Positions 2,726-41,175 of a DNA stretch of 64,000 nucleotides are shown here, piece after piece. Position numbers and translations under genes: made by a program. Numbering within the stretch: position 1 is the stretch's first letter; each line of letters starts with the position of its first letter. The stretch is from NCBI GenBank assembly GCA_965240325.2, contig OZ251222.1, positions 3,534,001 to 3,598,000 on the forward strand, in the 5' to 3' direction. A model generated the notes under the pieces. It was not told where the DNA came from, did not search any database, and worked only from the letters and a program-made list of their open reading frames with translations. The DNA is from Rebecca billardiae RCC1528 (Eukaryota > Protista > Haptophyta).

Positions 2726-2763
2726 AATAAGAGACGCACACAGCGTAGTAGGCAGGCGAGATT
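2726..2763 (+). mobile_element. Partial copy A of the 55-bp dispersed element
   Basis: AATAAGAGACGCACACAGC(gtagt)AGGCAGGCGAGATT matches the copy at 22892-22959. Confidence 0.85.
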
Positions 2764-4137
2764 ACTACTACTACTAGGATAAGTACTGTTACTAGGTGCC
2801 GTGGAATCCGGCGTGTCCCAGTTGCTGCCAACCAACTCTGTTAAGTGTATCATGTCGTCATCATCGGAGTCCGGGGCCCCGGCGCCGATTCTCATTCAGA
2901 CTACGTACGTCTGATGAATCGGACTGAGCTCTAGGGCTCCCGTCATCAGTCCGTCGGGCCGTTCCGCCGTCCGGCGTGTCACGGGGCGTTCGGCCCGTTC
3001 GTCGGGTCCGATCAGCGCGCAGCTAGTGCCAGTCTGGGTCCCCGTCCTACTCAGCAGTATGATATATAAGCCTCGCGGCTCAGGCTACTTCTTCGAGCCA
3101 CTTCATCAGTGGCAACGGGCTTCATCACGAATCAATGCACAGGAGCTCGGTACCATATCCGATTCCATCACCGTTGCCCCCCCGGGCCGAGCCGGGTCCG
3201 CGATTACGTATCAACTGGCAGGCACGGGTCGTGAAAGCTCTCACGGGTCGTGAACGCGCTCATGGCTGTGTCAAGAAGCGCACTGCACGTTCGGCAAAGG
3301 CGGTGCCTCTAGGTGCGTGCTTACTGTGTTGCAGCGTGGCTCCTGTAAAAGCGAGCCCCCCTGCGCAAGGTAGACGTTGGGGTAGCAGAATCATAGATAC
3401 GCTGCCTCGAGTCCGTGCAACCCTGGCTTTAGGAGCGTTGCTTCTCGTGGGATTGCTCGGCGGGCGGGGCTAGCCCACAGGATGGAAAGCGAACGCAGGC
3501 ATGAACCACGGACGCCGTGCGCTCAGGGATGCAGGAACACGAAGCACGGATCCGCGTTGGTGTACGCGAACGATCCGCAGAAGCGCACTCGCAGTGTGCC
3601 TGCCGCGCTTCCAGCCAGCACCACAGTTTCAAGTTGCGAGGTCAACGAGAGGCAGGTCGCCTTGTGAACCAGTGCAGGTTGTATTCAGGCGCTCAATGCA
3701 TCATCCCCATCCTTGCCGCGACGGCGGGCGGGGCGCGACGACCGGAGCGACGGGCGCCACGACGGGCGCGATCGACGGCGGATCGATTAAGGAGATATCC
3801 CGCCACAATGCATGCTTTCCGGCCTCGTTTGCCCAACCTGCTTGCCAGCTGTGAAGAAGCTAAGATCATACTTGTATAGGATCATTTCTATAGTATGTTC
3901 TCTCACTTGTTCTCTCTGAACAAGATGAATCTCATACCCGCGAGGACGAGGCAGAAGAGTTGCGGGACACTGTGACAGCTGACAAGCTTCTTGACAGCAT
4001 CGATGCACGTTTCGAGCAATGTCTTCGATCTGAGAGGGTACAACGAAAAAACAATCTGAATCTAGATTGTCGACAGACGTGGCCAGCCACGACGACAGAG
4101 CGCGGCAGCGCGCGCGCGCACATCATCGGTCGCATCG

Positions 4138-5508
4138 ATGGCGGCAAGCGCCACGCGCGCCCGTCGTCACGCCGGGTGGTCGTGGGCAGCTGCGGCGGCG
4201 CTGGCTTGCGCGGCGCTGGGAGAGGAGCGGGCGTTATCGACGTGCAGCCTGGACGCGTTCGACGCGCCGCAACCCGCGCCACGTGACATCCTTGGCGGCG
4301 CTGGTGGCAGCGGCGGCGGCAGCGCAGACGTGGGCGGCTGGGACCCCGCGCTTACAGGGCCGTACGTGTGCGCGATCGGCCGCCCGGGCTGGTCGCTCGA
4401 CATCGAGGCGGAGTGGGACGCGTTTGCCCGCGTGTACAGCGCCCGCTCGCGCGCGTGGTGCGAGCTCGACGCCCTCGCCTTCCAGGTGCAGCGCTTCCCA
4501 AAGAACGCGCTGAGCGCGTGCGTGGCGACGACCGGTGGCACTGGCATCTCGCACCACTTCGGTATGTGGCTGAGCGTGCGCGCGGTGCGGCCCGCGCTGA
4601 TCGTCGAGTCGGGCGCGTACCGCGGCAAGGGCACCTGGGTGCTGCGCCAGGCCGCCGGCCCCGACGTGCCGATCGTCGTGCTCTCACCGGTCGCGCCGCG
4701 GCAGCTGGGCGGCTGGGTCGACCGCTCGGGGCGCACGCACTACATGGTGGGCGCCAACTTCACCGACTTTGGCGAGGTGGACTGGGCGGCGCTGCGCGCG
4801 CGACTCGGGCTCGGCCCGCGCGCGCCCGCGCTCGCCTTCTTCGACGACCACCAGTCCGCCACGCGCCGGCTGCCCCAGGCGCGCCGGCGCGGCTTCCTGC
4901 ACGTGCTCTGGGACGACAACTTTGCGCTGGTGCCGCCCGTGCAGCGCAAGGGGCTGTGCACCAGCCCCAAGATGCTGTGCGACGGGCACAACGCGCTCGG
5001 CGCGCTGTTCAACGTGAGCGATGCGCAGTCCGAGCGCGACCACTTCGGCGCCACCGTCCGCCCCGTCTCGCGCGCGCAGCGCGTGCAGCGCGCGCGAGAG
5101 CTGCGCGCGGCTGCTGAGGCGTACGTCGAGCTGCCCCCGGTCTCCTGGCTGCGCACCGCGTTCCCCAAGCCCGTGCTCGGGGCGATCGGCGCGGCGCGCA
5201 CGCGCGGCGGGGCTGCCGGGGCGTGCCGCCTCGTGCGCGACTTCTCGGGCATGCAGCAGCGCCCGTGGTTCGTCGGCGACGAGGCGGCGCGCCGGCGCGC
5301 CCAGCTGACGCCCGCCCCCCTCGAGCTGGACGCGCACACGGTGGACGCGCTGCGCAAGCTCGCCGCGCAGCGCAAGCCGGTGGCGGGCGGGCACGCGCGG
5401 CAGCCGGCCCTCGGCAGCCGCCTCGTGTTCTCGCCGCCGGCCGACGCGTATGGCAACATGGCGTACATCCGGCTCAGGCCGCTGCCGCCGTCGGCGTCAT
5501 ACTCGTAA
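4138..5508 (+). CDS. Uncharacterised class I SAM-methyltransferase-like protein, probably N-terminally anchored or secreted
   Basis: 456-aa ORF with host-like codon usage and a hydrophobic N-terminus. Motifs HFGMW..VRP.LIVESGAYRGKGTWVLRQA, FTDFGEVDW and FFDDHQ...LWDDN resemble a conserved plant/algal uncharacterised family with a Methyltransf_24-like motif I. Confidence 0.7.
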   Translation: MAASATRARRHAGWSWAAAAALACAALGEERALSTCSLDAFDAPQPAPRDILGGAGGSGGGSADVGGWDPALTGPYVCAIGRPGWSLDIEAEWDAFARVYSARSRAWCELDALAFQVQRFPKNALSACVATTGGTGISHHFGMWLSVRAVRPALIVESGAYRGKGTWVLRQAAGPDVPIVVLSPVAPRQLGGWVDRSGRTHYMVGANFTDFGEVDWAALRARLGLGPRAPALAFFDDHQSATRRLPQARRRGFLHVLWDDNFALVPPVQRKGLCTSPKMLCDGHNALGALFNVSDAQSERDHFGATVRPVSRAQRVQRARELRAAAEAYVELPPVSWLRTAFPKPVLGAIGAARTRGGAAGACRLVRDFSGMQQRPWFVGDEAARRRAQLTPAPLELDAHTVDALRKLAAQRKPVAGGHARQPALGSRLVFSPPADAYGNMAYIRLRPLPPSASYS

Positions 5509-6148
5509 CGCTTGCGCGGTGGCGCCTCAATCTCACTCGATCTCACTCTCAGGCAGACTCAGCCCGAGTCAGGCTCACGTCGTGAAAGCGTCGTCACAGC
5601 ATTGACGACTTAAATAATGACGACGAGGATAGACTACGACCCCGGCGTTAGACTGCCCTGATTACGACTGATATATATATATACTTACTCTATACTTATA
5701 TCTAGCCACTGCTCCTATCAGGCTGCTCATCAGATAGACTGATATAGTGAGTAACTATGGCGCCGGGCTGAGCTCAGCATCATATCGGATTATTGAAACG
5801 CGCACAGCGGCGTGATGCGCGGACAGGTTGCACGGGAAACGCGACTGTCCTTGGTGTTACATTTCTCAGACACGGCGCCTCTGAACTCACTGAAGCAAGG
5901 GTGTCCAGGGTCCGCCTTCTTACGCAGTGTGAGTGGAACCTTGTGCGGCCGGGCTGCGACACTCAGCAGAAGCCACGATAGCTGACGGCTGTCGCCGGCC
6001 GCCGCGCGCACTCTGCGCCGACATGCCGCTGCCGGGTAGTCATGAAATCCCAAAGCCCCGGGCGCGATGCTCCGCGAGTCCTCGACGGCGGCAGCGGGCC
6101 GCATCGCGCCGCACTCGCCGCCGTCCCGAGGCCCTTGCCGTCACGCGC

Positions 6149-6910
6149 TCATCGGAACGGGCGCGGGCGGAGGATGCGCGCCTTGCCCGGCCTCCGCTGC
6201 TCCTTGGCCCACTTGAGCGTCGCGTCGGAGATGTAAAAGTCCATCAGGCGTGACGGGTCCTCCTCCGCCGCGCGCATCACGTCGCCCAGGCTGGTGACAG
6301 TCACCGACGGCTTGGAGGGCAGTGGGTCGCGGCTCTTGATCGACGTGCGCGCCCACACGCGGTCGAGCTCCTCCTTCGAGAGGAAGAGCGGTGTGACGGT
6401 CTTGCCGCGCTTGTTCGCGGCAAGGCCCTCCGCGACGAACACCGGGACCTCGGGCGCCCGCTTGAACGGCTTGCCCTGCGAGAGGTAGACCATCTTTGCG
6501 TTGGTGCGCTGCCGCGTGTGCGGGTGGAAGCGCATCAGCATCCGCAGCTCGCGCCCCTGGTCGTTGTACAGGCCCGAGCGCTGCTGGCGCTGCGCCATGC
6601 GGATGGCACGGTGCAGATCCGTCTTCCACATCCGCGCGTCCGAGGCACCCGGCATGCGCTTGAGCTCGTCGAGCGAGCGCTCGGCGTCGCGCAGGAAGAC
6701 GTACATCTTGCCCACCTGGTCGCCCGACGGCATGTTGGTCAGGTACGGCTGGCCCATGTCGTTGGTGAGCAGGAACACGGGGACCTTGCCCAGGAGCGAC
6801 TTGAGCGACTGCTTCCGTATCAACACCTCACCGCGCGCCCCGGCCGCGCAGAGGGCCACCGCCGCGACGAGCACGCGACACATGGCGGCCGCTCGCATGA
6901 TGAAGGCCAC
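6149..6910 (-). CDS. TIC22: Tic22-like plastid protein-import chaperone with N-terminal signal peptide
   Basis: Contains the duplicated Tic22 motifs L.KVPVFLLTN..GQPYL and VPVF...TPLFLSKEELDRVW...VTSLGDV. A hydrophobic leader (VLVAAVALCAAGARG) precedes them. Confidence 0.8.
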   Translation of the reverse strand: MAFIMRAAAMCRVLVAAVALCAAGARGEVLIRKQSLKSLLGKVPVFLLTNDMGQPYLTNMPSGDQVGKMYVFLRDAERSLDELKRMPGASDARMWKTDLHRAIRMAQRQQRSGLYNDQGRELRMLMRFHPHTRQRTNAKMVYLSQGKPFKRAPEVPVFVAEGLAANKRGKTVTPLFLSKEELDRVWARTSIKSRDPLPSKPSVTVTSLGDVMRAAEEDPSRLMDFYISDATLKWAKEQRRPGKARILRPRPFR

Positions 6911-7045
6911 GTGTTGCCGTGCTGCGCGAGGCCGCTGCGCTCGGACGACTTGAGTCTTGACGAGCGACGCGATTGGTGGTCATCAAGCCGCTGAATGCAC
7001 GATGGCTGCCGCCCGCGCGTGCCCGAGAGAGGGGGCCCAAGAGCC

Positions 7046-8671
7046 ATGATGGCCGCGGAGGAGCAGCTGTACGCCTGGCTGCAGGCCCACGGCGCCCGCT
7101 TCGACGCGCTGCGGCTAGCCGACTTCCCAGACGGGCGCGGGCTCGCTGCGACGCGCGACCTCGCCGAGGGCGACGAGCTGCTCCGCGTGCCGGAGCGGCT
7201 CTTTGTCTGCGATGCGTCCGCAGCCGCATCGCAGCACGGCGAGCTCGCGCGCGCGGCGATGGCCGACGTGACCCCGGCCGAGCAGATCTGCGTGCAGCTC
7301 GTCGCCGAGCGCGAGCTCGGTGCCCGCTCCTTCTACGCCCCGTGGCTGCAGCTCGTGCCGCGCGAGTACACAAGCGGCCTCACCTTCGGCGCGGCCGAGC
7401 TGGAGCGACTGCGTGATGGCGGGCTGGTGGGAGCGGTGCGCGCGGAGCGCGAGCGGCTCCGCGCGCGGCACCGCATCCTGCGCGACGCGCTGCGCGCCGC
7501 GGGCGGCGCCGACTCGGCCGCGCTTGCGCAGCAGCTCAGCTGGCGCCGCTTCCTGTGGGCGTGGTGCACGCTGCAGAGCCGAGGCGCGCACATGCCCGCG
7601 GCACAGCGCGGCGGCGCGGACGGCGGCGAGCCCGCCCGCGGCGCGCGCGACGCGGGCTGGGCGATCGTGCCGTATGGCGACATGTTCAACCACCGCAACG
7701 TGCCCACGCGCGCCGCCTACGACCCCGCCTCGCGTGCGTACGTGTACACGCTCGCGTGCCCCTCTGGCGTGCGCGCGGGCTGCGAGGTGCACGTGCAGTA
7801 CGGTGCGCACCCCTCCGCCGAGCTGCTGCTGTCGTATGGCTTCGTGCCGAGGGAGAACGAGGCAGAGACGGTGGTGCTGCCGGCGGCGCTCGGCGAGGCG
7901 CGCGGCTCGGCGTCAGAGCAAGAGGTGGACGCGCGGCGCGCTGAGCTGCTCCTGCAGCTCGGCCTCAGCGGGCCGCCGTGCCTGCGCGCGCGCGCGGACG
8001 CTGGCGGCGTGGCAGCCGATGCCGAGTCGGCCGCGCCTGCGGTGGAGGCTGCGGGCACGGAGGATGCGCTGCCGTGGTCACTGCTCACGGCGGTCCGCAT
8101 CGCGCACATGCGCGAGGACGAGCTTCGCGCGTACTGGCGTGTCCTCGGCGGCGAGCCCATCTCGGTCGGCAACGAGCTGCGCGCGCTCAGCTGGCTGCGC
8201 TCCCAGCTGGACAGCCGGCTGCGCCAGCACCAGCACCCAGCGGCCGCCGCCAGGCGCGCCGAGCCGGGGGCACAGGGCGGTGCGCGTGCGGAGGTGGTGC
8301 GCGCCATCGACGCGTGGCACGCGTCGCAGCGCAAGCTGCTCGTCGCATGCCGTGCGGCGGTGGAGGCGCGACTCGTGGACCTCGAGCATGGGCCAAACAG
8401 CGCGGGATCGGCAGAGCCGGCCGCTGCCGAGCCCAAGGCGGCGCCGATCGTGGCCTCGCGCGCGCGGGATGCGCTGCCTGCGGCACCTCCGTCCACGAGC
8501 GTGCGGGGCGCCAGGCGCCAGGCGCGGCGGCGGAGGAGCGCCGGTGGGGATGACCTGGACCGGGCTGGCGAGCCACATGCTGACAGTGTGCACACTGGCG
8601 GCGGGTTCGAAGGCGGCGGCGCTCGCGCAGGCAAGAAGGGACGCCGATCGTCGAGCACGTTGGAATCGTAA
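7046..8671 (+). CDS. SET-domain protein-lysine methyltransferase (Rubisco LSMT/SETD3/SETD4-like)
   Basis: Motifs WL..HGA, GRGLAATRDL..G..LL.VP, P.GDMFNH, G.EV.VQYG...AELLLSYGFV, followed by an LSMT substrate-binding region (PISVGNE..AL..L). ATG at 7046 preferred over 6995. Confidence 0.9.
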   Translation: MMAAEEQLYAWLQAHGARFDALRLADFPDGRGLAATRDLAEGDELLRVPERLFVCDASAAASQHGELARAAMADVTPAEQICVQLVAERELGARSFYAPWLQLVPREYTSGLTFGAAELERLRDGGLVGAVRAERERLRARHRILRDALRAAGGADSAALAQQLSWRRFLWAWCTLQSRGAHMPAAQRGGADGGEPARGARDAGWAIVPYGDMFNHRNVPTRAAYDPASRAYVYTLACPSGVRAGCEVHVQYGAHPSAELLLSYGFVPRENEAETVVLPAALGEARGSASEQEVDARRAELLLQLGLSGPPCLRARADAGGVAADAESAAPAVEAAGTEDALPWSLLTAVRIAHMREDELRAYWRVLGGEPISVGNELRALSWLRSQLDSRLRQHQHPAAAARRAEPGAQGGARAEVVRAIDAWHASQRKLLVACRAAVEARLVDLEHGPNSAGSAEPAAAEPKAAPIVASRARDALPAAPPSTSVRGARRQARRRRSAGGDDLDRAGEPHADSVHTGGGFEGGGARAGKKGRRSSSTLES

Positions 8672-9029
8672 TCGTTGTCAGCATCAGCATATCAGCATCA
8701 GTCAGGCCGGGGTTGGGAACCGTCAGCCGTAGTGAGGCGCCGAGAGACTACTACGCGGTTCGTGTAACGGGCCGATGAGAATCAGAGCAGACTGCAGGCT
8801 GGCATTACCCATGAGACATGATGATGATAATTGATATGCGCATCACTAGCTTAGCTAGCAGTATCGTCATCAATAATAATTATTATCAGCATCGCGCATT
8901 ATGTGATGCGGATGTCAGCGTCAACGACAACGATCCTGCTCACGAGTCATGACGTGCACTTCTGTGACTGCTTCTTTCTGACCTGACTTGACTCGGACTG
9001 AGCAGAGTGAGCTCGAGCTCACTCCACCA

Positions 9030-9035
9030 TCTCTC

Positions 9036-9080
<45 letters not shown>
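9030..9080 (+). repeat. (CT)n microsatellite
   Basis: Seen directly in the sequence. Confidence 0.95.
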
Positions 9081-9082
<2 letters not shown>

Positions 9083-9637
9083 GTGCTGCTGTATCGCCGA
9101 GTAGTAGTAGTTACAGGGATGAGTAGTATGTAGTTTTGCAATAATCGTATCTGTCGATCCTGCTCTTAACACGCAACAGCGCTATATACATATCATCGTC
9201 GTCATTTCTGCATCACCGCCTAATACTGTCTCGGGTCAGCAAGTGCGTCGTGGCCGTGGAGTGCTCGGGGCGGGGCAGTGCCTCGGGCTCGGTGCGGTCG
9301 TACGACGGTAGTAAATATATACCACACATGCGCGAACGACACAATTGCCGCCAGCGCAGTGAGACTGATCGAGCGCGCGCCGACTTCATCCGAGCCACGG
9401 GCCATATTGAGGCCGGCCGACTCGTCAGCCTCAGTCAGTCCCACTCGCCACTCGGGCACTTGACAGTGTCCTGAGACTTGAGAGCTCACTGATAATGAGG
9501 GAGGTGACTGAGGCTCGCCGGGCGCGCCACACTCGCTGGCACGCAATAATAAATAATATGACAATTACGCCACGCGCGCGGCACGATTGGCCTCAGGCCT
9601 GGCGCCTGTCGGGCTCAGTAGTTGATGATATGACGAC

Positions 9638-9671
9638 GTGAGCACAGAGCAGTCGACTGCTCTGTGCTCAC
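9638..9671. repeat. Perfect 34-bp palindrome
   Basis: GTGAGCACAGAGCAGTC|GACTGCTCTGTGCTCAC, with no loop. Confidence 0.95.
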
Positions 9672-9874
9672 TACTCGTACACTAGCAGTACCGCATCATA
9701 TATATATATATATGTATAGCAGTTTGTGACGTCGACAAACTACGACTCATCATCAGGCGCTAATAATAACCAGCTGTCAGATTGCCGGAAAGTAACTCGG
9801 TAGCCTGGCTTGAGCCCCTGTGACTAGTGAGTGTGACTACGTCTACCGCCAATCAGTAACTCGTATGCACTTTG

Positions 9875-9878
<4 letters not shown>

Positions 9879-9965
<87 letters not shown>
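9879..9965 (+). repeat. (AG)n microsatellite
   Basis: Seen directly in the sequence. Confidence 0.95.
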
Positions 9966-9967
<2 letters not shown>

Positions 9968-13750: not shown

Positions 13751-14200
13751 GTGGGACGGCGCCGGTCTCCTGCCGATAATTATAATAAATAAATAATAAG
13801 CAGACTAAATATATATACATATATTATAAATTCATTCGCGGCGGCGGCTGCAAGTCAGCCCGATGGCCGATGGCGAGCGGGCGATCGTGATCGTCCGGTC
13901 GTCGACAAGTCAGGTTACTCAGTCTCAGTGTCGACCCGCCGGTCGCCTACAGCGCAGTAGCTACTAGCATGATACACTTGCTGTCTGTCTTGCACCGAGT
14001 GACAGTGGCTGAGCCTGAGGGCTGACCATCTGCCGCCTATGGTGAGTGGCGGGGTCCGACCACGAGGGGACGGCGGTCCCAGTCTTAGTTTTTCATTATT
14101 GTAGGTACAGTTTACTAATATCGCTGTGGCCATATTCACAGGCTCATAGCTAAGTGGGTACTTCTCGCCACATTTTCGTACTGTGTCCTAGGAGGAAGAT

Positions 14201-14300: not shown

Positions 14301-14378
14301 CGGCCGAACTTTGTCCTATTTGCAAATACGGTAGAAGACCACGGGGGTGGGCATCAGGTTAAGAGGTGTTTTGCGTAA

Positions 14379-14396
14379 TAAGAATAAGAGACGCAC
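14379..14396 (+). mobile_element. Left part of split copy B of the 55-bp element
   Basis: TAAGAATAAGAGACGCAC. The continuation AGGCAGGCGAGATTGACGCCCG is at 16023-16044, and a possible outer fragment TACAGTTTACTAA is at 14106-14118. Confidence 0.8.
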
Positions 14397-16022
14397 TTTA
14401 TACCACTGTGGGGGGCAACGTGCATCAATGATCGGCAGGACCATGCACGTGGCCTTACTGAAGGCAGGGCTGGGCATCATGCAGGCCCGCAAGGACGTGG
14501 ACTCCCAGCTGTCAAAGGCAGGACGTCTCCTTCGACATGCCAAGGAGCTTCGGCCGCCGCCTGGGCACGGCCCGGGGGGGCAGCCCCCACCCCCACAGGC
14601 ACAGGCAGGCCCAGGAGGGGCAATCGCCATGAATAATCAGTTGCAAGGACCACCTGTCATCCAGCAGCAACCCCCTGCCCAGGCTGGCCAGGGCTGGCAG
14701 GCAGGCGCGGGGCAGGCCAACCTGCACCAGCCCATAGCGCGCGGTCACCACGTGCGCCCCCAGCTACTCTTGCGGGCGTGGCCTCTTCAGCGTGCTCGCC
14801 CCCTCCCTATGGTGATTGCGTGGCCGGTCTGCAGCCTGCCACACCTCTTGTGGCATGGCCGCTCCAATATCAATATGCCACCCCGCTGGCTCGCAGCGAT
14901 GTGGGTCCGCCGGACAATGTGAATGTGTTGACACATGGGGGCCCTGAGATGGAGGCAGACCCGGCTGCTGGCAGTCACACTGGTAACGGAGCTCAAAGCG
15001 GCCTTACACAGTCAGACACTGGACCGAGCAGGCCACACAGACACCTGCTGGCTCTGCCGGGCCACTGGCAGCCCCCAGGCGCAGGCTGCCTCCTCCTAGT
15101 CAAGCTCAGCAAGACAGCCCCCCGCCCAAACGACACTGCCCACCCCGCCAGGCAGATGTGCCGCAGCGGAGCACGCTACCCCCTGCAAAGCGCAGCAGGA
15201 AGAGGCGAGCAAACGACACCTTAGCCACTCGCCACCACTTTGCTTGCTTCCTACAGCGGCCCACGCCCTGACTTGATGCCCGATGTAGCACACATGTCTG
15301 ACATGACCCCCTCTGCCTCCATAGCTGCACGAGTGAAATACAGGCGCCTCGCTGCCAGGGCCAGTGGCCCAGACCCCTGCCCAGCTGTACTGGGCTCGAT
15401 GACAGTCCCCTCAGTCCCCTTCCCCTCGCAGGGATCGGCTAGTGGCTGGCCCTCTGCCCACACTCGGGGGCACCCTAGGGGGTGCCCCTTCTGCCGACTC
15501 GGCTCAAACTCGATGATCTTGAATTGCAACTCAGTGCACTGCTTGTACCTGGGACCACCCACCCCACACGGTGTTGGGCTTGTATGCTGTTGGCAATGGC
15601 ATACCCCCGCCCCCTCTGCGGGAGGCGGGCTGTCCACAGTGGAGTGGTGTCAAGACACTAGGTGTCTCGGTCAGTGGTTTGAGGTTGGGTGAGGGTGGTG
15701 GTTGGTTGGGGGCTGGCCAGGGTAGGGCTGGAGGCTTCGGCCGCCAGCCTGATCACCCGGAGCCCGTTATTATAAAGGGGAATTTAAAAACAGCTCTGCA
15801 GACAGTGTTGGGCTTGTAGTTGTATGCTGTCGGCAATGGCATACCCCCGCCCCCTCTGGAGGCGGGCTGTCCACAGTGGAGTGGTGTCAAGGCACTTGGT
15901 GTCTCGGTCAGTGGTTTGAGGTTGGGTGAGGGTGGTGGTTGGTTGGGGGCTGGCCAGGGTAGGGCTGGAGGCTTCGGCCGCCAGTCTGATCACCCGGAGC
16001 CCGTTATAAAGGGGAATTTAAA
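14397..16022. mobile_element. CpG-poor degenerate insertion, retroelement-like, with a tandemly duplicated structured terminus
   Basis: Composition differs sharply from the flanks (few CG, many CA/TG) and there is no intact ORF. It interrupts the 55-bp element. The terminal ~220 bp are duplicated, and a truncated copy of the same terminus lies at 41183-41267. Confidence 0.6.
15571..16022 (+). repeat. Tandem ~220-bp direct repeat (15571-15789 and 15805-16022)
   Basis: Both units run GTGTTGGGCTTGTA...GGCTGGAGGCTTCGGCCGCCAG...TATAAAGGGGAATTTAAAA. Confidence 0.95.
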
Positions 16023-16044
16023 AGGCAGGCGAGATTGACGCCCG
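16023..16044 (+). mobile_element. Right part of split copy B of the 55-bp element
   Basis: AGGCAGGCGAGATTGACGCCCG, identical to the corresponding part of copy E. Confidence 0.85.
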
Positions 16045-16203
16045 CCAAATGTCAAATTATTAGCAGGGGGCTCAGTCATCTGAGTCATCAGGCGTGGAAG
16101 CGATGCAGGAAATAAAGCGCCAAAATTACCGGTTTTTGGCCGTACTGTATACGTTATTTCCAGCTTTCCGCGATCGGGTAGTTAGAGCGTAGTGAAAAAG
16201 CAG

Positions 16204-16270
16204 TACGGGCGTCAATCTCGCCTGCCTGAGCTGTGTGCGACTGTGCGTCTCTTATTCTTAGTAAACTGTA
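16204..16270 (-). mobile_element. Full-length copy C of the 55-bp element (with 8-bp internal insertion)
   Basis: TACGGGCGTCAATCTCGCCTGCCTGAGCTGTGTGCG(actgtgcg)TCTCTTATTCTTAGTAAACTGTA. Confidence 0.9.
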
Positions 16271-18926: not shown

Positions 18927-18971
18927 CTCGCCTGCCTGAGCTGTCTGCTGTGTGCGTCTCTTATTCTTAGT
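18927..18971 (-). mobile_element. Partial copy D of the 55-bp element
   Basis: CTCGCCTGCCTGAG(ctgtctg)CTGTGTGCGTCTCTTATTCTTAGT. Confidence 0.88.
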
Positions 18972-19475
18972 CAACGGTAGTCGTAGAAGTTCTGTGGTGA
19001 TAACGCGACCGAAGGCTCGTGGTACCTTTAACCTTACTAATCTGCAGCCGGACCGGCCGAGCCGGACCGTTTTCGGCAACTGGCGTCCGGCACCTCGTCG
19101 CGTCAAACTCAAAGCGTGCGGCTCTCAGGGCTCGCGCCGCAGATTCACGCCGCCGACAGCCAGACACCGCACCAACAGCAGTTGCCTCGGCCAGCGGTCA
19201 GCGGCTCCCTCGCTCGCCGAGCCAGCGGGGGAGCACGCTAAAGTGCGCTTTTGTCCCGCGTTGATGAACCGCGCTGTGTTCATCATCATGAGCTACCCGA
19301 GTGGCTGTCCAGTGTCCTGGCGAGCGAGGCCAGGCTGCCAGATTAGTGATTAGTGATTCGGTCAGGTGGCGACTGACAGTGACGAGTCATCAGGCTCACT
19401 CACTGTTCATCGTATCATTCACGTCGGCAGTCCGTCCGTGGGATCCAAGCGGAAGAGGGGTCATCAATCGTGGCG

Positions 19476-22891: not shown

Positions 22892-22959
22892 TACAGTTTA
22901 TTGTAAAAACTAAGAATAAGAGACGCACACAGCTCAGGCAGGCGAGATTGACGCCCGTA
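22892..22959 (+). mobile_element. Full-length copy E of the 55-bp element (with 9-bp insertion)
   Basis: TACAGTTTA(ttgtaaaaa)CTAAGAATAAGAGACGCACACAGCTCAGGCAGGCGAGATTGACGCCCGTA. Confidence 0.9.
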
Positions 22960-27073: not shown

Positions 27074-27095
27074 GCCTGAGCTGTGCGCGTCTCTT
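27074..27095 (-). mobile_element. Degenerate core fragment F of the 55-bp element
   Basis: GCCTGAGCTGTGCGCGTCTCTT, one mismatch to the consensus over 22 bp. Confidence 0.6.
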
Positions 27096-32616: not shown

Positions 32617-32656
<40 letters not shown>

Positions 32657-33379: not shown

Positions 33380-33416
<37 letters not shown>

Positions 33417-34385
33417 GCCGGGCAGCGGCATCGCCGGCGGCGAGGCGCTGCGGCTGCCGACGCCGTTGGGCGCGTCGGCGCTCGCCGGGGCGGGCGCGGG
33501 CGGGCGCGGCGGCACGGCCGGCCGGGGCGGCGGCGGCGGCGTGCAGCCGCGCGAGAGCAGGAACGCCGAGACCGGCGAGCCGATCGCGAAGAAATGGTCG
33601 ACGGCAAAGTCGAGCGATGGCCGGCGCAGCGTGGGCGCGCGGTAGCCGCGGCCGACGCCGTCGCCGCCGCCGAGCAGGTCGTACACGATCATCGAGCCGA
33701 GCGAGTGCCCCACGATCGACACGCCCCCGCGGAACCCCGGGTGCTCCTTCATGTACGCCGCGTACCGGCCGTTCATCTGGCTGCTCACCTCGTCCAGGAT
33801 GATCTGGCCGTACGACGGCTGCACGTAGTACAGGATGTCCATGAGGTACTCGCCGGCGAACCAGCGCATGTCGGAGGGGGTCGCGCCGGGGAGCGTCGAG
33901 AGCGTCGCGAAGTTCTGGTCCAGCCCGCGCGCGCGCACGCGCGAGTGCCACTCGATCGCGCGCACGTCGACGTGCACGGGCAGCTGGCTGAAGTGCGCGT
34001 CGAGCAGCCGCCGCAGCGTCTGGCGGAACTCGAGGTTGCCGCCCGTGCGCAGGCCGGCGGTGCCGTCCCACGAGGTGCACTTGTCCTCGTCGAAGTCGTC
34101 GTGCCGGCCGATCCCGTGCACGATGAAGATCAGCTGCCGCACCGCCGGCGGCCGCGGCCGCGTGTCCTCGGCGCGCGCGCGCGCGCCGCGCAGCCGCGCC
34201 TCGTTCCACAGCGGCGCGCGCGGGCCGACGGCGGGCGGCGGGCCGGCCGAGCTCGGTGGCGACGTCGGATGCGCCACCACGGGGCCGCTCGCCACGCTCA
34301 GCACCGCCGCCACCCGCCCCGAGTCGCACACATCGATGCGCACAGAGACAGCGCCGGCGACCATTCTTTTTGCCGCCGCTTGCAT
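30741..34385 (-). CDS. DDHD-family (PA-preferring) phospholipase A1 fused to PH, PH and PX domains; intron 30945-31019
   Basis: Lipase motifs LIFIVHGIG, IEWH, DILYY, GHSLG, FFAIGSP, DPVAHRLEP and SHSAYW. Then PH-like (KGSIDL...RTYEM.....DADAWF; KTGWLRKRG...RWFCL) and PX-like (FVVFVI...HRFSEFQALH..L....PP.LPK) regions. The PX helix is completed by the exon at 30741-30944. Start uncertain. Confidence 0.85.
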
Positions 34386-34530
34386 CCGCACGACTTTGCC
34401 GACCGTGACCCAACCGGACTGCACAACCGGACTTCTCCGACCGGCCAATCAGGAAGCCTGACCGCGCGCAAGTTGAAATCTCGAAATCCGTCAAGCCCGT
34501 GCAGCCGCTCAAACGAGACAGCGACAAGCA

Positions 34531-36145
34531 ATGTTCGGCGTGTGGCGCGCGGCGATAATTGCAGCATGCCTCGCCGGCGGGGGCGGCGGCGTGGCGGCGA
34601 GCGAGCGCGCGCTTGTGGTCTCCCAGACGCACGGCGCGCCGCCGATACGCATGCGCCTCGACCAGCTGCGCACCGCGCTCAGGCGCGACGTCCTCAAGCT
34701 GCCGTCGTTTGTCTCGGGGACGAAGCGGCGGAAGCGCAACGTGCTCATCCTCATGTCTGACACGGGCGGCGGCCACCGCGCCTCGGCGATCGCGCTCAAG
34801 GCGGCGATGGAGGAGCTCCACCCGAATCGCCTCAACGTCACCATCGTCGACATGTACGCGCAGTGCGCCGCCCTGCCGTGGCGCTGGATCCCGCACATGT
34901 ACCGGCGGCTCGCAAAGAAGCCGCTGCAGTGGCGGCTCACCGTGCTGCTCTTCGCGGACTTCCGCCCGGTGCGCACGTTCTGCGAGTGGTGGATCCACTA
35001 CTCGACCGCGAGCGGCCTGCGCCAAGTGCTCGAGTCCTTCGAGCCCGACCTCGTCGTGAGCATGCACGCGATGTGCAACATCTACCCGCTCGCGGTGCTG
35101 CGCCGGCTAGGCGGCGGCCGGCGGCGCATCCCCGTCGTCACGGTGGTGACGGACCTGACGACGGTGCACTCGGCGTGGTTCGACAAGGGCGTGGACGCGT
35201 GCTTCGTCGCCTCGGAGGAGGCCGCCGCCGTCGCGCGCTCCAGAGGCCTCAAGCCCTCGCAGCTCCGGCTGTACGGCCTGCCGATCCACCCGATGTTTGG
35301 GCGGCGCGGCGCGGGCAAGGGCGCGCTGCGCAAGCGCGTGGGCGTGACGGCGCACAAGCCGCTCGTGCTGCTCGTCGGCGGGGGCGACGGCGTGGGCGGG
35401 CTGGGGCGCCTTGCCGACGTCGTGGCGGCCGAGCTCGGCCAGCGCTTCCCCGGGCAGGTCCAGCTGCTCGTCGTGTGCGGGAAAAACGAGCGGGTGTGTG
35501 CGCGCGCGCGCGCGCGGCGCCGATGCGCGCCGCGCGCGGCCGGCGGCGCGACCGCCGCGCTCGCGGCTGAGCGCCGCGCGCCGCGCGCCGCGCCCGCGCC
35601 GCCCCGCTCGCAGGTGCGCCAAGACCTGTGCGCGAAGAGCTGGCCCGGCGTGGACGTCTTCATCCGCGGCTTCGTCAAGCCGATGAGCGACTTCATGGGC
35701 GCGGCCGAGGTGGTGATCACCAAGGCGGGGCCGGGCACGGTGATGGAGGCGGCCTCGCAGGGGCTGCCTGTGATGCTCTCCGGCTACCTGCCGCCGCAGG
35801 AGTCGGGGAACGTCGACTGCGTGGTCAACGGCGGCTTCGGCGCGTACAGCCGCAAGCCGGCGGTGATCGCGCGCACTGTGTGCGAGTGGCTGGTGCGCGC
35901 GCCGCGCCCCCCGCCGCGCGCGCCGTCGTGCGCGCGCCGCTCGGCGCCAACACGCGCCCCACTGCACGCCCCGCGCCTCTGCCGCGCGCGACACGCAGGC
36001 GGACCCCAAGCTCCTCGCCCAGATGAGCACCAAGGCGAAGCAGGCTGCTCGGCCGCAGGCGGTGTACGCGATCGCGCAAGACATCTGCAACATGCTGCCG
36101 CCGGTCGCGGAGGAGAGGAGACACCCTGCGCGCATCGTCACGTAG
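34531..36145 (+). CDS. MGD: Monogalactosyldiacylglycerol (MGDG) synthase, GT28; join(34531..35493,35614..35892,35999..36145)
   Basis: Motifs VLILMSDTGGGHRASA.AL, PDLVVS.H, TVVTDL..H..WF, VLLVGGG.G.G, ITKAGPGT..EA and P.QE.GNV. Removing two GT-AG introns gives the conserved tail LLAQMS......ARPQAVYAIA. N-terminal signal peptide present. Confidence 0.93.
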
Positions 36146-36800
36146 GCACGTGTTTTCGGGGCGCACGCGCGCCGCCACCAGCCGCGCGCACCGCCGAGCC
36201 GCCGGGCGCACGGCACGCCAGGGATCGAGAGCGTGCGCACGGGTGCACCATCGGCACGGGCAGGGGCCAGGGGCTGGCGTCGCTGCCGCAGATGACCGTG
36301 GTGCGGTAACCGCTGCGACGATGCACACGCCGCCTCTCGAAGTCGATCGGCCGTGCCGTGCCCCAGGCCTCGTGAGCTCGTCCGGACGGCAATGCCGCGC
36401 GCGTTGCCACCGCGCTCACTGTCGGCTCACCGGCGCGTCGTGGGTCGTGCCTCGTGGCCGGTGGCGGCGGCGCGTCGGCGTTGTAATTGGAGAGGATGGG
36501 GTCTGGGGATGGGCGCAAGCCGCATGAGGCTGCTACGCCAGGCTTGCAGCATGACACTGTGCGCGGTCCGCATGATGACACTCCATGATGATGATACGGC
36601 ACTACTGTACTAGCTTTCATACTTAATATGTACTACTACTACAAGGATGATACCCTGCTTACCCCCATTTTCTTCAATAGACAATAGACAATAGACAATA
36701 TAGCAGTAGTAGGTTTGGCGGCAAAGAGGCCGTTCAAAATCCGGCTGAGAAGGGCGGAAGGGTCAAGGGCCGCCGCCCGCGAGCTTGGCGATCGGCGACG

Positions 36801-37349
36801 ATGTCATCGGGGGCTGATCCGCAGAGCCCTTCAGACCGCCTGGTGGCGAGTTTGACGTCCATGGTCGAGCGGGCGGAGCGTCTCCTGGCCGACGACGCTG
36901 GGCCGTTGCTCTCGCCGCGTCGCCTCGCCTTTGGCAGTGGCGCAGCGTACTCGCCGCAAATGCAATCCACGTGCTCGCGCAAGACCATGCGCTCGCCTCT
37001 GCGGCCGCCGCTGTGCGCCGTGTCGCCGGCGCGCGCGCAGGAGCCTCCGACGTCCACGCGCACGCCCGTCTCGGCCACGCGCCGCGCTGCCGAGCACAGC
37101 GCCCTCCTCTCCAACATCGAGAAGATCGTCGAGTCTCGGCTGGCGCACGAGTCGGCCAAGTGGGAGGTGCTGCAGCAGCAGCTCGCCGCGTGCATCCGGA
37201 TCGTGGGCGAGGGCTCGGCGGTCCATGTGCCGCCGCCGCCCCCCGCGCCGCCGCCGCCGCCGGTGGCGCCGCGCGTGCCGCCGCCCACGCGCACACCGAG
37301 CGCTGCGGCGCTGCCAGTGCCCGAGCTCCCTCGCCCGGCAGAGCTGGGC

Positions 37350-37396
<47 letters not shown>

Positions 37397-38595
37397 TCCT
37401 GTGAGCGCACGAGCGCAGGCGCCGCCACGTGCCGAGCCTCCTCCGGCGTGCGCACCCACGGGCAGGCCTGCGCCCGCGCCACCGCCGCCGCCTGTGCCCG
37501 CGCGGCCGAGAGGCGGCAAGGCGGGCGGCAGCGGCAGCGCGGCCGACGCGATGAAGGCGGCGATCCGGAGGCGCGCGAACACGAAGCTGGTGCAGCGCAA
37601 GGAGGAGGTGCTCGCCCTCATCTCGCACGCCCTCGACACCCCGCTCGCCACGCCCGACGCCGCCGCCGCCCTCGCGCGCACGCTGGAGGGCAGTGCGGAC
37701 GAGCTCGGCCTGCAGCTGTGCGGCGCCGAGGGCTGGGCGCAGCGGCTGGAGATTGGGAAGAAGGGCGCGGCGGGGGAGTGGCACTTCAGCGAGGCGGAGC
37801 GCGCGCGGGCGGCGGAGGCGCAGCTGCGCCTGCTCGCCGCGCGCTCCGTGCGTACGTGGACCGAGCAGCTCCGCGCGCAGGCAGATGCGGCCACGCGCGC
37901 GGCGGACGACGCGAGCGCGGCGCGCGGCGCGAGCGCGCGCCGGGGGCGCGGCGCGGGCGGAGGAGCGGCGCGCTCGCGCGGGCAGCAGGTGGAGCACTGC
38001 CGCGACGTGGTGCACGGCGCACTGCGCACGTGGCGCGCCATCTTCGACGACCCCTCCTTCCGCGGCGCCGCGCGCGACATGGCCGCGCGCGCGGTGCCGC
38101 ACGCCCTCCCCGCCGAGGCCGAGCGTCTCGTGCGCGCGCTCGGCGCGCTCGGGCACACGCTGGCCGCGCTGGCGAGGGACGAGCTGGTGCGCGCGGCGCG
38201 GGCGCGGCGCGCGCGCGCGGTGTGCCCCGCGCGCGGCGGCTGAGGCGGCGCCCTCCCCTCGCCCCCTCCCCGCGCCGCAGGAGAGCCTGAGCGCGGAGCG
38301 GCTGGCGATGACGCGCCGCTATCGCGCGCCGCAGAGCGCCGCGCTGCTGCACGGCTGCCTGGCGCTGCTGCACGAGCTGGCAGGGCTGCCCTCCGCGCCC
38401 GCGTGCGAGGGCGCGGTGGCGTCGGACGCGGACGACGCGATGCCCGCGCCGGTCGACCCGTCGGAGCTCGCCGCGCACTCGCGCACGGTGTCGGCCGCGC
38501 TCGAGGCGCTCTACACCCTCGAGCCCTCGGCCGCGCCCGGCGCGCGCGCGGCGGACGCGCTTGCCGGCGACGAGTCGGACGACGATGCCGTCTGA
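36801..38595 (+). CDS. Proline-rich protein with a WH2-like motif; intron 38187-38280
   Basis: Coiled-coil-like segment, poly-Pro tracts, then AADAMKAAIRRRANTKL. A GT..CTGAG..CAG intron links the 36801 and 37693 ORFs in phase 0. Confidence 0.65.
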
Positions 38596-38815
38596 ATCAG
38601 CAGTAGTAGCAGCCACCTCGTGGGCGACTCGTAGTACGTCCACGAAGGACTGCGTCCGGCGTGCTGCACTCGAACGGGCGCTAGCTGCACTAGTAGCGCG
38701 ATCGGCTCCGGTGACTCCGCGTATTAAACGGTCATTACTCTCTATAAGTATCAGTCACTATGACCATTACACGCCGTATATATTATATTATATAACTAGC
38801 GCCGAGCACTCGAGC

Positions 38816-38818
<3 letters not shown>

Positions 38819-38874
<56 letters not shown>

Positions 38875-38956
38875 TCCGTGACGAGGCATCGTCAATAATA
38901 AATGTCGCGTAGTCGTTGTAGAATTTTCCGTACATACAGTAGTCGTAGCAGCTCAG

Positions 38957-39011
<55 letters not shown>
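38819..39011 (+). repeat. Two (AG)n microsatellites (38819-38870, ~38966-39011)
   Basis: Seen directly in the sequence. Confidence 0.95.
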
Positions 39012-39014
<3 letters not shown>

Positions 39015-40090
39015 GACTGTCGTCATAGTTAGTCAGCGGTAAGTCACGGTCATCCAATAAGACCAAATGCTCGTGAGGCCGTGTCAGTGCCTCAGTCGTG
39101 GTCTGTACCAGACCATCGCCGCTCAAAGGGCCGCGCGCTCCCGTGGCGGACAAACATAAATATAAACAGTCGTTCGTCCGTCCGGGTTAATACTTCTATG
39201 CCCCGGTGACGAGATATCGTACGGTTCCGGGGCCCGGGCCGCCGCCAGGCGCGGGCGTGCGAGATGGACGAGCCTAGCCAGCCTTGAAGCGCGTCCTGCG
39301 TCGCCGGCGGCGGCGGCTCGCACCCGGGGGGCGCGTCGCGTGCACCGACCAACATACATCTTTCGGCAACCCGCCCACGCCGGCCCACGCAGGGTTCGTT
39401 GGTCTTGTGCTCGGGCGGCGGGACCACAACTACACCCGCTGTCCAACCGCCCGGTCTTGCGGCGCTGCAATTAGGGCTTATCATGTGACCCCCCTGCGCG
39501 TCCCAACACGCGGAGACGATGGCGTTCTTCGAGTGACTGGACGCGCCGCCGCGCTGGCACTGGCAGCAGCGACCGCAGCGCCACGCGGACACAGTGGCGG
39601 CCGGCGCTGACTGATATATGACTCATCGTCACTTTCATCAGATCGATGATGAGTCACTGAGCGACTGACAGATGCTGTGAGATGACTCGCGCCATGTCGG
39701 CGAATATGCTGATGCTGAGTTTACGTACAGATCTGATGATGAGCGACCTGACGACAATGCTCAGATGGAGTACTATAATTCTATCGGAATTCGGATGCCA
39801 ACGCCTGTATGACCGCTATAGTATTGACATATACTACTCTACTACTTATACACGCGCGCCTACTACCGCGGCGCAGCGCGGCATACGTCGAAGACCGCGA
39901 CCTGCGCTGCTGCTTATGATTGGTATGCTGAACTAGCTACTGCAGCGCGCCTGCGGAGTGCGGAGCGAGTTGCCGCGGCTGCCAGCCGGCCGCTCAGCCG
40001 CGCCCAGCCAGACTCAGAATGGCGGCGCGACGACGAGCTGCTCCGAATGAAAGTGGTCGCCGACGGGGTACATGTGCGCACGCCTACGTA

Positions 40091-40762
40091 TCATGCGCGA
40101 CTCATCGTGCTCGAGAGCGGCGTGGCCGGCGTGATCTGCGGAGTGCCGTACGGGTCGGGGTCCGGCATCTCCGAGCGCTTCCACTCGCGCTGCCACATGA
40201 TCATCACGTTCATGCCCGAGAGGATGGTAATCTGGCCTGGCTCGTCGTCGACGATGTGCGAGCCGATGTTGTCCAAGTAGATGGTTCCGTCTGGTCCACG
40301 GAAGAAGATGGCCCGCTGCTCCACGGTTGGGTTCGGAACAGCCACATGCATGTCAACAGGTCTGCCGTTGTCACCCATCACTTTGTGGACTTCAGTGTGC
40401 GTGCCTCCCGACAGAATGATGGTGCTGTTCCTCGTGTTGAAGAAAGCCTCGGTGTACTGGTGCTGAGCGCTTCCCACGCTTGACTGAAGGGGCTGGACCT
40501 TCCAGTTGCCCGACAGAATCTTGTGCACGTGCTCGAGCTCGGGGCCAACGAGTTCGACGGCGCCCTTTGGGATGCCAACCACTTCCGCGGAGTGGATTTT
40601 GCGGCAGTACCACAGCGTGCACGGGTAGCAGACGAAGCAAGTGAACGCGCACGAACGGCACAGCGCTGTCCTCAGCTCGTCCCACGTCTCGTCGTCGACG
40701 AGCAGGACTTGCTTGTGCGAGCCATCCTGCGTGACGGCGAGCACCGGCACGTGGGCACCCAT
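40091..40762 (-). CDS. Orphan 223-aa protein with a Cys-rich hydrophobic segment
   Basis: Intronless ORF with globular-looking composition and less extreme GC than its neighbours. Contains LCRSCAFTCFVCYPCTLWYC. Confidence 0.6.
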   Translation of the reverse strand: MGAHVPVLAVTQDGSHKQVLLVDDETWDELRTALCRSCAFTCFVCYPCTLWYCRKIHSAEVVGIPKGAVELVGPELEHVHKILSGNWKVQPLQSSVGSAQHQYTEAFFNTRNSTIILSGGTHTEVHKVMGDNGRPVDMHVAVPNPTVEQRAIFFRGPDGTIYLDNIGSHIVDDEPGQITILSGMNVMIMWQREWKRSEMPDPDPYGTPQITPATPLSSTMSRA

Positions 40763-41128
40763 GCGTGGTCAGGCAAGCCCATCGAGACGCTGGGCGAGTG
40801 CGAAAGCCTGCGTGCCGGCTCGCGACTCACGAGCGCACGCAGATGCACGGCGGACGTGATGCTCGTCGCGCGCGCACCTGCCACACGGGCTCGCCGTTGT
40901 TGATTATCCCTGGCATGCGCGGAAGGACCGCTCCCGAGCTGCTGAGTGAGGGTGCACTGCCCACCCGCACTTCGAGGTCCCGGGAATCGCCGTCACGAAA
41001 CGAGGCAGCTTTCCAGATCCGCCAATTAAATAGATGAGGTTCGTGTCAGATGCGCGGTATCCCAGTCGCTCCCGACCGACGACGATCGCCACAGAGTACT
41101 GTGCACGTTAAAAACATAGTAAACTGTC

Positions 41129-41175
41129 TCTCGCCTGCCTGAGCTGTGTGCGTCTCTTATTCTTAGTAAACTGTA
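41129..41175 (-). mobile_element. Copy G of the 55-bp element
   Basis: TCTCGCCTGCCTGAGCTGTGTGCGTCTCTTATTCTTAGTAAACTGTA. TAGTAAACTGT also occurs immediately left, at 41117-41127. Confidence 0.9.

What the first reader, a model, noticed from the sequence alone, without database searches (positions are those of the whole stretch)
2726..41175. Unexplained 55-bp TA-bounded dispersed element present 7 times in 41 kb
Seen: consensus TA-CAGTTTACTAAGAATAAGAGACGCACACAGCTCAGGCAGGCGAGATTGACGCCCG-TA at 2726(+), 14379/16023(+, split), 16204(-), 18927(-), 22892(+), 27074(-) and 41129(-). It is always intergenic. The two full copies (C, E) begin and end at the same bases, with TA on both sides and unrelated flanks, yet the element has no internal terminal inverted repeat and no poly-A. 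Known: TA|CAGT ends are typical of Tc1/mariner/pogo. Inference: it could be an ultra-short non-autonomous element with asymmetric ends, solo TIRs of a larger transposon, or a recombination or landing site. None of these is established from this window.
Basis: partly seen in the sequence, partly recalled or inferred. Interest (0 to 1): 0.75.

Follow-up and report, generated by a model that had tools for sequence, protein, structure and literature searches.

The report
Truncated tails of a LINE retrotransposon
The "55-bp TA-bounded element" is the reverse-complemented last 45-56 bases of an 8.3-kb LINE retrotransposon of this GC-rich alga. The LINE has left well over a thousand tiny 5'-truncated stubs next to TA sites, so this is an ordinary repeat, not a new kind of transposon.

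Summary
The motif is real at all seven sites, but it is not a 55-bp unit. The right end stops anywhere from about 33 nt to 8.3 kb. The longest copy (L063:214-8479) carries, on the opposite strand, an open 2,631-aa ORF with an AP-endonuclease domain and a reverse-transcriptase domain.

The window therefore holds extreme 5'-truncated LINE copies. The core 19-mer occurs 1,441 times in the 72-Mb genome, and only about 8 copies reach the 5' end. The TA is the insertion site: the 3' junction reads AAACTG|TA in 47 of 50 copies.

Half of the stubs start inside the 7-nt apical loop of a conserved 3' hairpin. A second family of 446 copies shares that hairpin. Stubs are never in coding sequence and show no orientation bias towards genes.

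The "split" copy is a stub interrupted by a second, non-coding retroposon. That retroposon has hit the same spot of the LINE tail at least 10 separate times.

Earlier follow-ups of this scan reached the same main reading on other DNA of this genome. Interest is low to moderate.

The parts
2726..2763 (-). Copy A: degenerate LINE-tail fragment (tail positions about 14-48 from the 3' end). It lacks the terminal 13 nt.
   Evidence: blastn against the full-length copy: 87% identity over 38 nt; sequence.
14377..14396 (-). Copy B1: the 3' part of an interrupted LINE stub (tail positions about 8-26).
   Evidence: It lies directly next to the 5' end of the inserted 1.62-kb repeat.
14402..16022 (+). A 1.62-kb non-coding retroposon that splits copy B. 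It has an A-rich 3' end, and its last ~215 nt are present twice (15570-15790 and 15808-16022).
   Evidence: Its 5' 160 nt has 37 genomic matches at 86-100% identity. Its 3'-end 16-mer has 366 hits. A 78-nt 5'-truncated copy sits at the same spot of another LINE stub at L089:250-327.
16024..16054 (-). Copy B2: the 5' part of the interrupted LINE stub (tail positions about 35-66).
   Evidence: blastn: 97% identity over 32 nt.
16206..16268 (+). Copy C: LINE stub of 55 nt plus an 8-nt internal duplication, with TA on both sides.
18927..18977 (+). Copy D: LINE stub of 44 nt plus a 7-nt internal duplication. The 3' terminus has 2 substitutions, and TA lies on both sides.
22894..22957 (-). Copy E: LINE stub of 55 nt plus a 9-nt insertion in the terminal region, with TA on both sides.
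27074..27095 (+). Copy F: 22-nt internal fragment of the tail, missing the last 16 nt.
   Evidence: 95% identity over 22 nt; E = 0.003, the weakest of the seven.
41129..41173 (+). Copy G: 45-nt LINE stub, 100% identical to the full-length copy. It starts in the hairpin loop and is followed by TA.
41102..41126 (+).
14108..14118 (-). An 11-nt micro-stub (TTAGTAAACTG followed by TA).
   Evidence: The 11-mer with its TA is expected 0.02 times in the window.

Best explanation
The motif is the antisense strand of the 3' terminus of an 8,266-bp non-LTR retrotransposon (LINE). The LINE has one giant ORF of 2,631 aa. It runs AP endonuclease, then reverse transcriptase with an intact YMDD motif, then a Cys/His motif, then an OTU-like C-terminal region. 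A 358-nt 3' UTR follows, with no poly-A.

Inferred mechanism (target-primed reverse transcription):
1. The endonuclease nicks at a TA, often within ACTG|TA.
2. The RNA 3' end (...UAGUAAACUG, perhaps followed by UA) is primed there.
3. cDNA synthesis usually aborts after only 33-60 nt. Half of the time it stops inside the 7-nt apical loop of a stable 3' hairpin 43-49 nt from the end.
4. The short cDNA is joined to the upstream DNA end by 1-5 nt of microhomology.

The result is a stub with one fixed end, one ragged end, and TA on one or both sides.

Shown here: the sequence continuity from stub to full-length element, the domains, the truncation series, the junction statistics and the hairpin. 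Inferred: the order of biochemical steps and the cause of the stop in the loop.
For: Copy number and boundaries:
- The core 19-mer has 1,441 hits and the reversed control has 0. The terminal 22-mer has 1,029 hits.
- One end is fixed and the other is ragged.
- Truncation points form a continuous series out to more than 1.7 kb among 29 longer copies.

The full-length element:
- L063 matches L062 at 94.9% over 7,541 bp, L061 at 96.0% over 3,904 bp and L064 at 93.6% over 1,861 bp.
- The 2,646-aa open frame lies on the strand that puts the motif at the 3' end.
- Pfam finds RVT_1 at E = 1.9e-25 and Exo_endo_phos at E = 5.4e-07.
- The RT region matches solved R2 (E = 4e-11) and L1 ORF2p (E = 4e-07) structures.
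- The 5'-most 330 nt occurs only 8 times, 3 of them at 100% identity. The DNA beyond it is an unrelated repeat found at other loci.

Stub statistics from an unbiased sample:
- 52 copies have an intact 3' end. 44 are 60 nt or shorter and 27 are 45-48 nt. 29 of 45 short copies start in the 7-nt loop (p = 6e-8 against a uniform spread). Mean identity is 99.6%.
- The 3' junction is AAACTG|TA in 47 of 50 copies. TA lies at the 5' junction in 37 of 50 copies against 34 of 100 controls. ACTG, CTGT or TGTA lies there in 18 of 50 against 13 of 100 (p = 0.002).

Structure and sister family:
- The hairpin folds at -28.9 kcal/mol, z = -2.9.
- Family 2 has 446 copies. It shares the inner stem, the loop and the last 10 nt, while its outer stems differ in sequence but still pair.

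The window matches only the last 66 nt of the LINE.
Against: - No locus-specific target-site duplication beyond 2-3 bp exceeds the shuffle control. The usual LINE hallmark of variable TSDs is therefore absent or minimal.
- No empty site could be inspected.
- The clade is unresolved. No restriction-like endonuclease or RNase H was detected by Pfam or by similarity to solved structures.
- The cause of the loop hot spot is not shown. A protein roadblock, RNA cleavage in the loop, or microhomology with the loop's A residues would all fit.
- In family 2 the loop class is only 3-4 of about 16 copies, and another hot spot fits microhomology.
My copies give 8.27 kb.
Confidence: 0.95

Rival explanations
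1. Ultra-short DNA transposon or MITE of the Tc1/mariner/pogo type, or solo TIRs of one, duplicating a TA target.
For: TA flanks both sides of copies C, D and E, and one end reads TA|CAGT.
Against: The element has no inverted repeat. The second boundary is not conserved. The sequence runs on without a break into an ORF with AP endonuclease and reverse transcriptase on the other strand. Head-to-head pairs share a single TA and involve two different families, which looks like two independent insertions and not a TIR pair.
Confidence: 0.01
2. Relic of a spliced leader, shared 5' leader or promoter module placed upstream of genes in sense.
For: Of the sampled stubs that lie within 800 bp of a gene, 25 of 36 face a 5' end. 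Earlier first readers in this genome proposed this (s1-371933, s1-371943).
Against: Orientation is unbiased: 13 against 12 at 5' ends and 5 against 6 at 3' ends. In the window, C and D point away from the downstream gene and E lies between two 3' ends. The motif continues into a LINE 3' UTR. Rfam gives no match.
Confidence: 0.01
3. The 45-48 nt stubs are full-length copies of a discrete small RNA, the LINE 3' fragment released by cleavage in the hairpin loop. The LINE enzyme would copy that RNA in trans, making it a 'mini-SINE', and the stubs would not be aborted cDNAs. This concerns the mechanism of truncation only; the LINE origin stands.
For: There is a sharp length peak: 27 of 52 copies are 45-48 nt, and 29 of 45 short copies start in the 7-nt loop. 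The same loop position is used in family 2. A polymerase stalled by RNA structure would be expected to stop at the base of the stem, not in the loop (inference).
Against: There is a continuum of other lengths (33-43, 53-60, 92 nt up to 8.3 kb). Start positions are blurred over 4 nt. The loop holds the only A residues between tail positions 33 and 49, so microhomology with a TA target could also make the peak.
Confidence: 0.12
4. The motif exists primarily as a recombination or landing site for other mobile elements.
For: A second retroposon abuts the tail at positions about 25-35 in 14 of 366 copies, with at least 10 different junction sequences. Three more copies abut the very end of the tail. 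Both halves of the stub flank the insert in window copy B and in L089.
Against: Only about 5% of that element's copies are in tails, so the tail is a hot spot and not an obligatory site. Junctions vary by up to 10 nt, unlike a recombinase core site. The origin of the motif is fully explained by the LINE.
Confidence: 0.03

Closest known systems
5'-truncated ('dead on arrival') copies of AP-endonuclease-type LINEs such as L1 and CR1/L2
   Same: A fixed 3' end with ragged 5' ends. The parent has AP endonuclease and reverse transcriptase. Truncated copies vastly outnumber full-length ones (1,441 against about 8).
   Different: Truncation is far more extreme (85% of copies are 60 nt or shorter). 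It peaks in a hairpin loop. There is no poly-A or microsatellite tail, and the TSD is at most a TA.
Stringent-type LINEs recognised through a 3' stem-loop (eel UnaL2, zebrafish ZfL2; PMC1636434, PMC4176376)
   Same: A conserved hairpin lies a few tens of nt from the 3' end, followed by a short conserved terminal sequence. Two families share both features, as a LINE and its partners do.
   Different: Protein binding to the hairpin is not tested here. RT clade membership is unknown. Those papers are not known to me to report truncation hot spots in the loop.
Dualen/RandI LINEs of green algae and cryptophytes (PMC9977147, PMC5029228, PMC4640811)
   Same: An algal host. A single giant ORF (2.5-5 thousand aa in the cited cases) that starts with AP endonuclease then RT, has a Cys/His motif downstream, and carries an extra protease-type domain in some members. 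The RT matches R2 slightly better than L1.
   Different: The defining second (restriction-like) endonuclease was not detected, and neither was RNase H. No RT phylogeny could be made.
Sequence-specific retroposons that insert into other repeats (target-specific non-LTR elements reviewed in PMC4640811)
   Same: This applies to the 1.62-kb element only. It inserts repeatedly at one spot of another transposon's sequence, and it has a fixed A-rich 3' end with 5'-truncated copies.
   Different: Only about 5% of its copies are at that spot. It is non-coding and its autonomous partner is unknown.

Membership tests
Non-LTR retrotransposon (LINE), AP-endonuclease type | Encodes a reverse transcriptase of the LINE type | tested here: met
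   RVT_1 at E = 1.9e-25, aa 803-1086. YMDD is present. phmmer hits R2 and L1 ORF2p structures.
Non-LTR retrotransposon (LINE), AP-endonuclease type | N-terminal apurinic/apyrimidinic-like endonuclease | tested here: met
   Exo_endo_phos at E = 5.4e-07, 30 bits against a cut-off of 24.5, aa 93-326.
Non-LTR retrotransposon (LINE), AP-endonuclease type | Fixed 3' end with a series of 5'-truncated copies, and no LTR or TIR | tested here: met
   lengths run from 33 nt to 8.27 kb, all ending at ...AAACTG.
Non-LTR retrotransposon (LINE), AP-endonuclease type | Variable-length target-site duplications | tested here: inconclusive
   Only TA or ACTGTA-like matches were found. Nothing locus-specific exceeds the shuffle control.
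Tc1/mariner/pogo DNA transposon or MITE | Terminal inverted repeats | tested here: not met
   No internal or paired inverted repeat. One boundary is ragged.
Tc1/mariner/pogo DNA transposon or MITE | DDE/D transposase in autonomous copies | tested here: not met
   The longest copies encode AP endonuclease plus RT only.
Tc1/mariner/pogo DNA transposon or MITE | TA target-site duplication | tested here: inconclusive
   TA follows the fixed end in 47 of 50 copies and lies near the other end in 37 of 50. This is equally expected from priming at TA.
Spliced-leader or leader relic | Sense orientation upstream of genes, and an SL RNA gene | tested here: not met
   13 against 12 orientations at gene 5' ends. 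No Rfam match.
Dualen/RandI clade | Both AP endonuclease and a restriction-like endonuclease in one ORF | tested here: inconclusive
   The AP endonuclease is present. The C-terminal 1,231 aa gives no hit to R2 structures or to any Pfam family. A divergent domain cannot be excluded.
Dualen/RandI clade | Position in an RT phylogeny | not testable with these tools
Stringent-type LINE (3' stem-loop recognition) | Conserved 3' hairpin shared with partner families | tested here: met
   The hairpin and the terminal 10 nt are shared by families 1 and 2. The outer stems differ in sequence but still pair.
Stringent-type LINE (3' stem-loop recognition) | The hairpin is required for retrotransposition and is bound by the ORF protein | not testable with these tools
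   This needs a retrotransposition or binding assay.

The most novel reading that the evidence does not exclude
The LINE's own 3' recognition hairpin acts as a built-in stop. Most integration events would then end in its apical loop, so that a 45-48 nt stub, not a gene-sized copy, is the element's main product. Each stub re-creates the ACTG|TA target and also offers a hot spot for a second retroposon. Stubs would thus seed self-reinforcing insertion nests in the short AT-rich spacers of a very GC-rich, gene-dense genome.
Probability: 0.25. Interest if true: 0.5.

Novelty: new member of a known kind. Interest (0 to 1): 0.25.

Why it matters
The main value is for annotation. One repeat family explains more than a thousand short conserved 'motifs' in the intergenic DNA of this alga. 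First readers have repeatedly taken them for leaders, TIRs or promoter elements.

Two features could interest transposon specialists:
- the loop-centred truncation peak shared by two LINE families;
- the repeated landing of a second retroposon at one spot of the tail.

The LINE looks active: it has an open 2,631-aa ORF, three copies identical over their 5' 330 nt, and stubs 99.6% identical. The truncation mechanism could therefore be tested directly.

Tried and rejected
- Whole-window repeat finding was swamped by the proline/serine-coding repeat at 47.7-64 kb and gave nothing for this finding.
- A search for locus-specific TSDs did not exceed the shuffled control.
- Pfam on five pieces of the ORF outside the two known domains found nothing at E up to 5.
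- The C-terminal half had no relative among solved structures.
- Rfam found nothing in the 3' UTR.
- The exact 24-mer for family 2 found only 3 copies, because of an A-run length difference. The corrected 19-mer gave 446.
- A pattern for the tail next to the 5' end of the 1.62-kb element found only the window copy, because most copies of that element are 5'-truncated.
I could therefore not inspect the flanks of the other copies of the second element, or take an unbiased family-2 sample.
- The large protein searches were not used.
Full report
**Observation**

Searches with its two halves find the clean copies and expect none by chance. Printing all seven sites shows their state.

- C and E are 63 and 64 nt, not 55, because each has an 8-9 nt internal duplication or insertion.
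- D has a 7-nt duplication and two changes at its terminus.
- A and F are degenerate pieces that lack the fixed end.

**What kind of genome this is**

The assembly holding the window is 72 Mb in 41 contigs, with 64-85% GC. Window genes include a Rubisco-LSMT-like protein, an MGDG synthase, a Tex-like protein and a PPPDE peptidase, mostly as long uninterrupted ORFs. A giant Ser-Pro-repeat ORF is also present. This is a photosynthetic eukaryote. I did not identify the species.

**One end fixed, one end ragged**

The core 19-mer of the motif occurs 1,441 times in the genome at up to one mismatch, and never in the reversed control. I aligned the first 30 places by position.

The right side stops at many different points, commonly after about 45 nt, sometimes after about 55 or 60 nt, and sometimes much later.

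Among 29 longer copies the end points form a continuous ladder from about 130 nt to beyond 1.6 kb. A fixed end with a ladder of truncations at the other is the signature of a non-LTR retrotransposon read on its antisense strand.

**The full-length element**

Walking out from the longest copies gave L063. It matches:
- L062 at 94.9% over 7,541 bp;
- L061 at 96.0% over 3,904 bp;
- L064 at 93.6% over 1,861 bp.

It holds an Exo_endo_phos (AP endonuclease) domain at aa 93-326 and an RVT_1 domain at aa 803-1086.

From the first ATG the ORF is 2,631 aa. The YMDD box is intact. The RT region matches solved R2 and L1 ORF2p structures.

The 5'-most 330 nt occurs only 8 times, three times at 100% identity. 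The DNA beyond it in L063 is a different repeat found at other loci. The element is therefore L063:214-8479, 8,266 bp. My copies do not support that length, and I could not resolve the difference.

Within the window, the only matches to this element are to its last 66 nt.

**Statistics of the stubs**

I sampled 84 copies taken in genomic order from two contigs.
- 52 have an intact 3' end.
- 44 of those are 60 nt or shorter, and 27 are 45-48 nt.
- Short copies are on average 99.6% identical to L063, and 36 of 45 are identical.
- The terminal 22-mer has 1,029 hits. On the first contig only 7 of its 57 listed places are absent from the core list, so few stubs are shorter than 34 nt. The peak at 45-48 nt is real and is not the tail of a monotonic decay.
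- The last 15 nt often carry small duplications of the terminal TAGTA/TAGTAAACTG unit. This looks like slippage at the start of reverse transcription.

**The TA**

Downstream of ...AAACTG the next two bases are TA in 47 of 50 copies.

At the ragged end, a TA lies within the 9-nt junction window in 37 of 50 copies, against 34 of 100 control windows. ACTG, CTGT or TGTA lies there in 18 of 50 against 13 of 100 (p = 0.002; p = 0.02 after removing tandem tails).

No longer, locus-specific duplication exceeds a shuffle control.

The simplest reading is that the target is TA, preferably ACTG|TA, which resembles the element's own end. That also explains two arrangements seen in the sample:
- head-to-tail stubs (L024, L102, and window copy G behind a family-2 stub);
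- head-to-head pairs that share one TA (L007, L027).

It reflects the insertion site, not a Tc1/mariner duplication.

**The hairpin**

The last 74 nt fold into a three-tier hairpin (-28.9 kcal/mol, z = -2.9), followed by about 20 unpaired nt. The inner stem is 8 bp and the loop is UCAAUCU, at positions 43-49 from the end.

29 of the 45 short stubs begin in that loop, against 26% expected for a uniform spread over positions 34-60 (p = 6e-8).

A second family has 446 copies. It shares only three features with family 1: the inner stem and loop, a short GTGTGC block, and the last 10 nt. Its outer stems differ in sequence but still pair. This is limited support for the structure from just two families.

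Three or four of about 16 family-2 stubs also start in the loop. Another family-2 class starts where TGTG in the element overlaps ACTGT in the flank, which points to microhomology-mediated joining.

I infer that the hairpin plus terminal sequence is the recognition signal. This is known for stringent-type LINEs (PMC1636434, PMC4176376). I also infer that synthesis often ends in the loop. Whether that is due to a bound protein, cleavage of the RNA, or microhomology is not shown.

**Relation to genes**

I used a codon-position GC rule calibrated on the Pfam-supported window genes.
- None of the 84 stubs lies in coding-like sequence.
- 25 face a gene 5' end and 11 face a 3' end within 800 bp.
- Orientation is unbiased: 13 against 12 at 5' ends and 5 against 6 at 3' ends.

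This argues against a leader or promoter role. Rfam has no match to the 3' UTR.

**The split copy**

Copy B is a stub interrupted at tail positions 26/35 by a 1.62-kb non-coding repeat at 14402-16022. That repeat has a fixed A-rich 3' end and 5'-truncated copies. One example is a 78-nt copy at L089:250-327, which sits at the same spot of another, otherwise canonical 46-nt stub.

Its 3'-end 16-mer has 366 genomic hits. Fourteen of them are followed within 30 nt by the LINE tail from positions about 25-35 onward, always in the same relative orientation. They show at least 10 different junction sequences. Three more abut the very end of the tail.

LINE tails make up roughly 0.1% of the genome, so this is far above chance. 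About 95% of that element's copies are elsewhere, so the tail is a hot spot and not an obligatory site.

My counts extend that reading.

**Classification and novelty**

The element is an AP-endonuclease-type LINE. Three features recall Dualen/RandI (PMC9977147, PMC5029228):
- its giant single ORF;
- its algal host;
- a C-terminal region that a language-model search links to OTU proteases. That is a lead only (score 0.93; I also read a Cys motif and a His-Tyr motif).

However, the restriction-like endonuclease that defines Dualen was not detected, and no RT tree could be built. I therefore do not file the element in that clade.

The phenomenon is an ordinary one, 5'-truncated LINE copies, in an unusually extreme form. 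Other follow-ups of this scan reached the same main conclusion on other pieces of this genome (s1-371933, s1-371943). I reached it independently, before reading them.

Noticed in passing
window 14402-16022; L089:250-327; genome counts: A 1.62-kb non-coding retroposon with an A-rich 3' end, 5'-truncated copies and 366 3' ends genome-wide. It has inserted at least 10 separate times at the same spot (positions about 25-35 from the 3' end) of the LINE tail, always in one orientation. Its autonomous partner is unknown.
   Followed up: partly
window 41102-41126; L007:1350-1473 and other loci: A second retroposon family (446 tails) shares the LINE's inner hairpin and last 10 nt but nothing else in the last 120 nt. 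It could be a sister LINE or a non-autonomous partner. Three copies end at the same 124-nt point.
   Followed up: partly
L063:1267-2229 (-), aa about 2080-2400 of the LINE ORF: The C-terminal region has a Cys motif and a His-Tyr motif. A language-model search links it to OTU-type protease clusters (score 0.93). Pfam finds nothing.
   Followed up: partly
window 42563-57589 (-), and GC 77-85% up to 64000: A giant open frame (over 5,000 codons, third-position GC 0.96). It encodes long Ser-Pro(n) repeats of the extensin/hydroxyproline-rich glycoprotein type, after a C-terminal region of repeated Cys-containing ...NYDS... modules.
   Followed up: partly
L025, L089:370-395, L019: A short repeat ending ...TATGATTTAACGACAC(AGG) abuts the LINE 3' end in several loci. 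It may be another element using the same TA site.
   Followed up: no
window 52-362 and 644-954: A 311-nt inverted repeat, 97% complementary, with 281 nt between the arms.
   Followed up: no
L063:8480-9400 and G000:C10:604330-605900 region: The DNA just 5' of the full-length LINE copy is a different multi-copy element, with inverted segments and a tandem array of units of about 200 bp.
   Followed up: no
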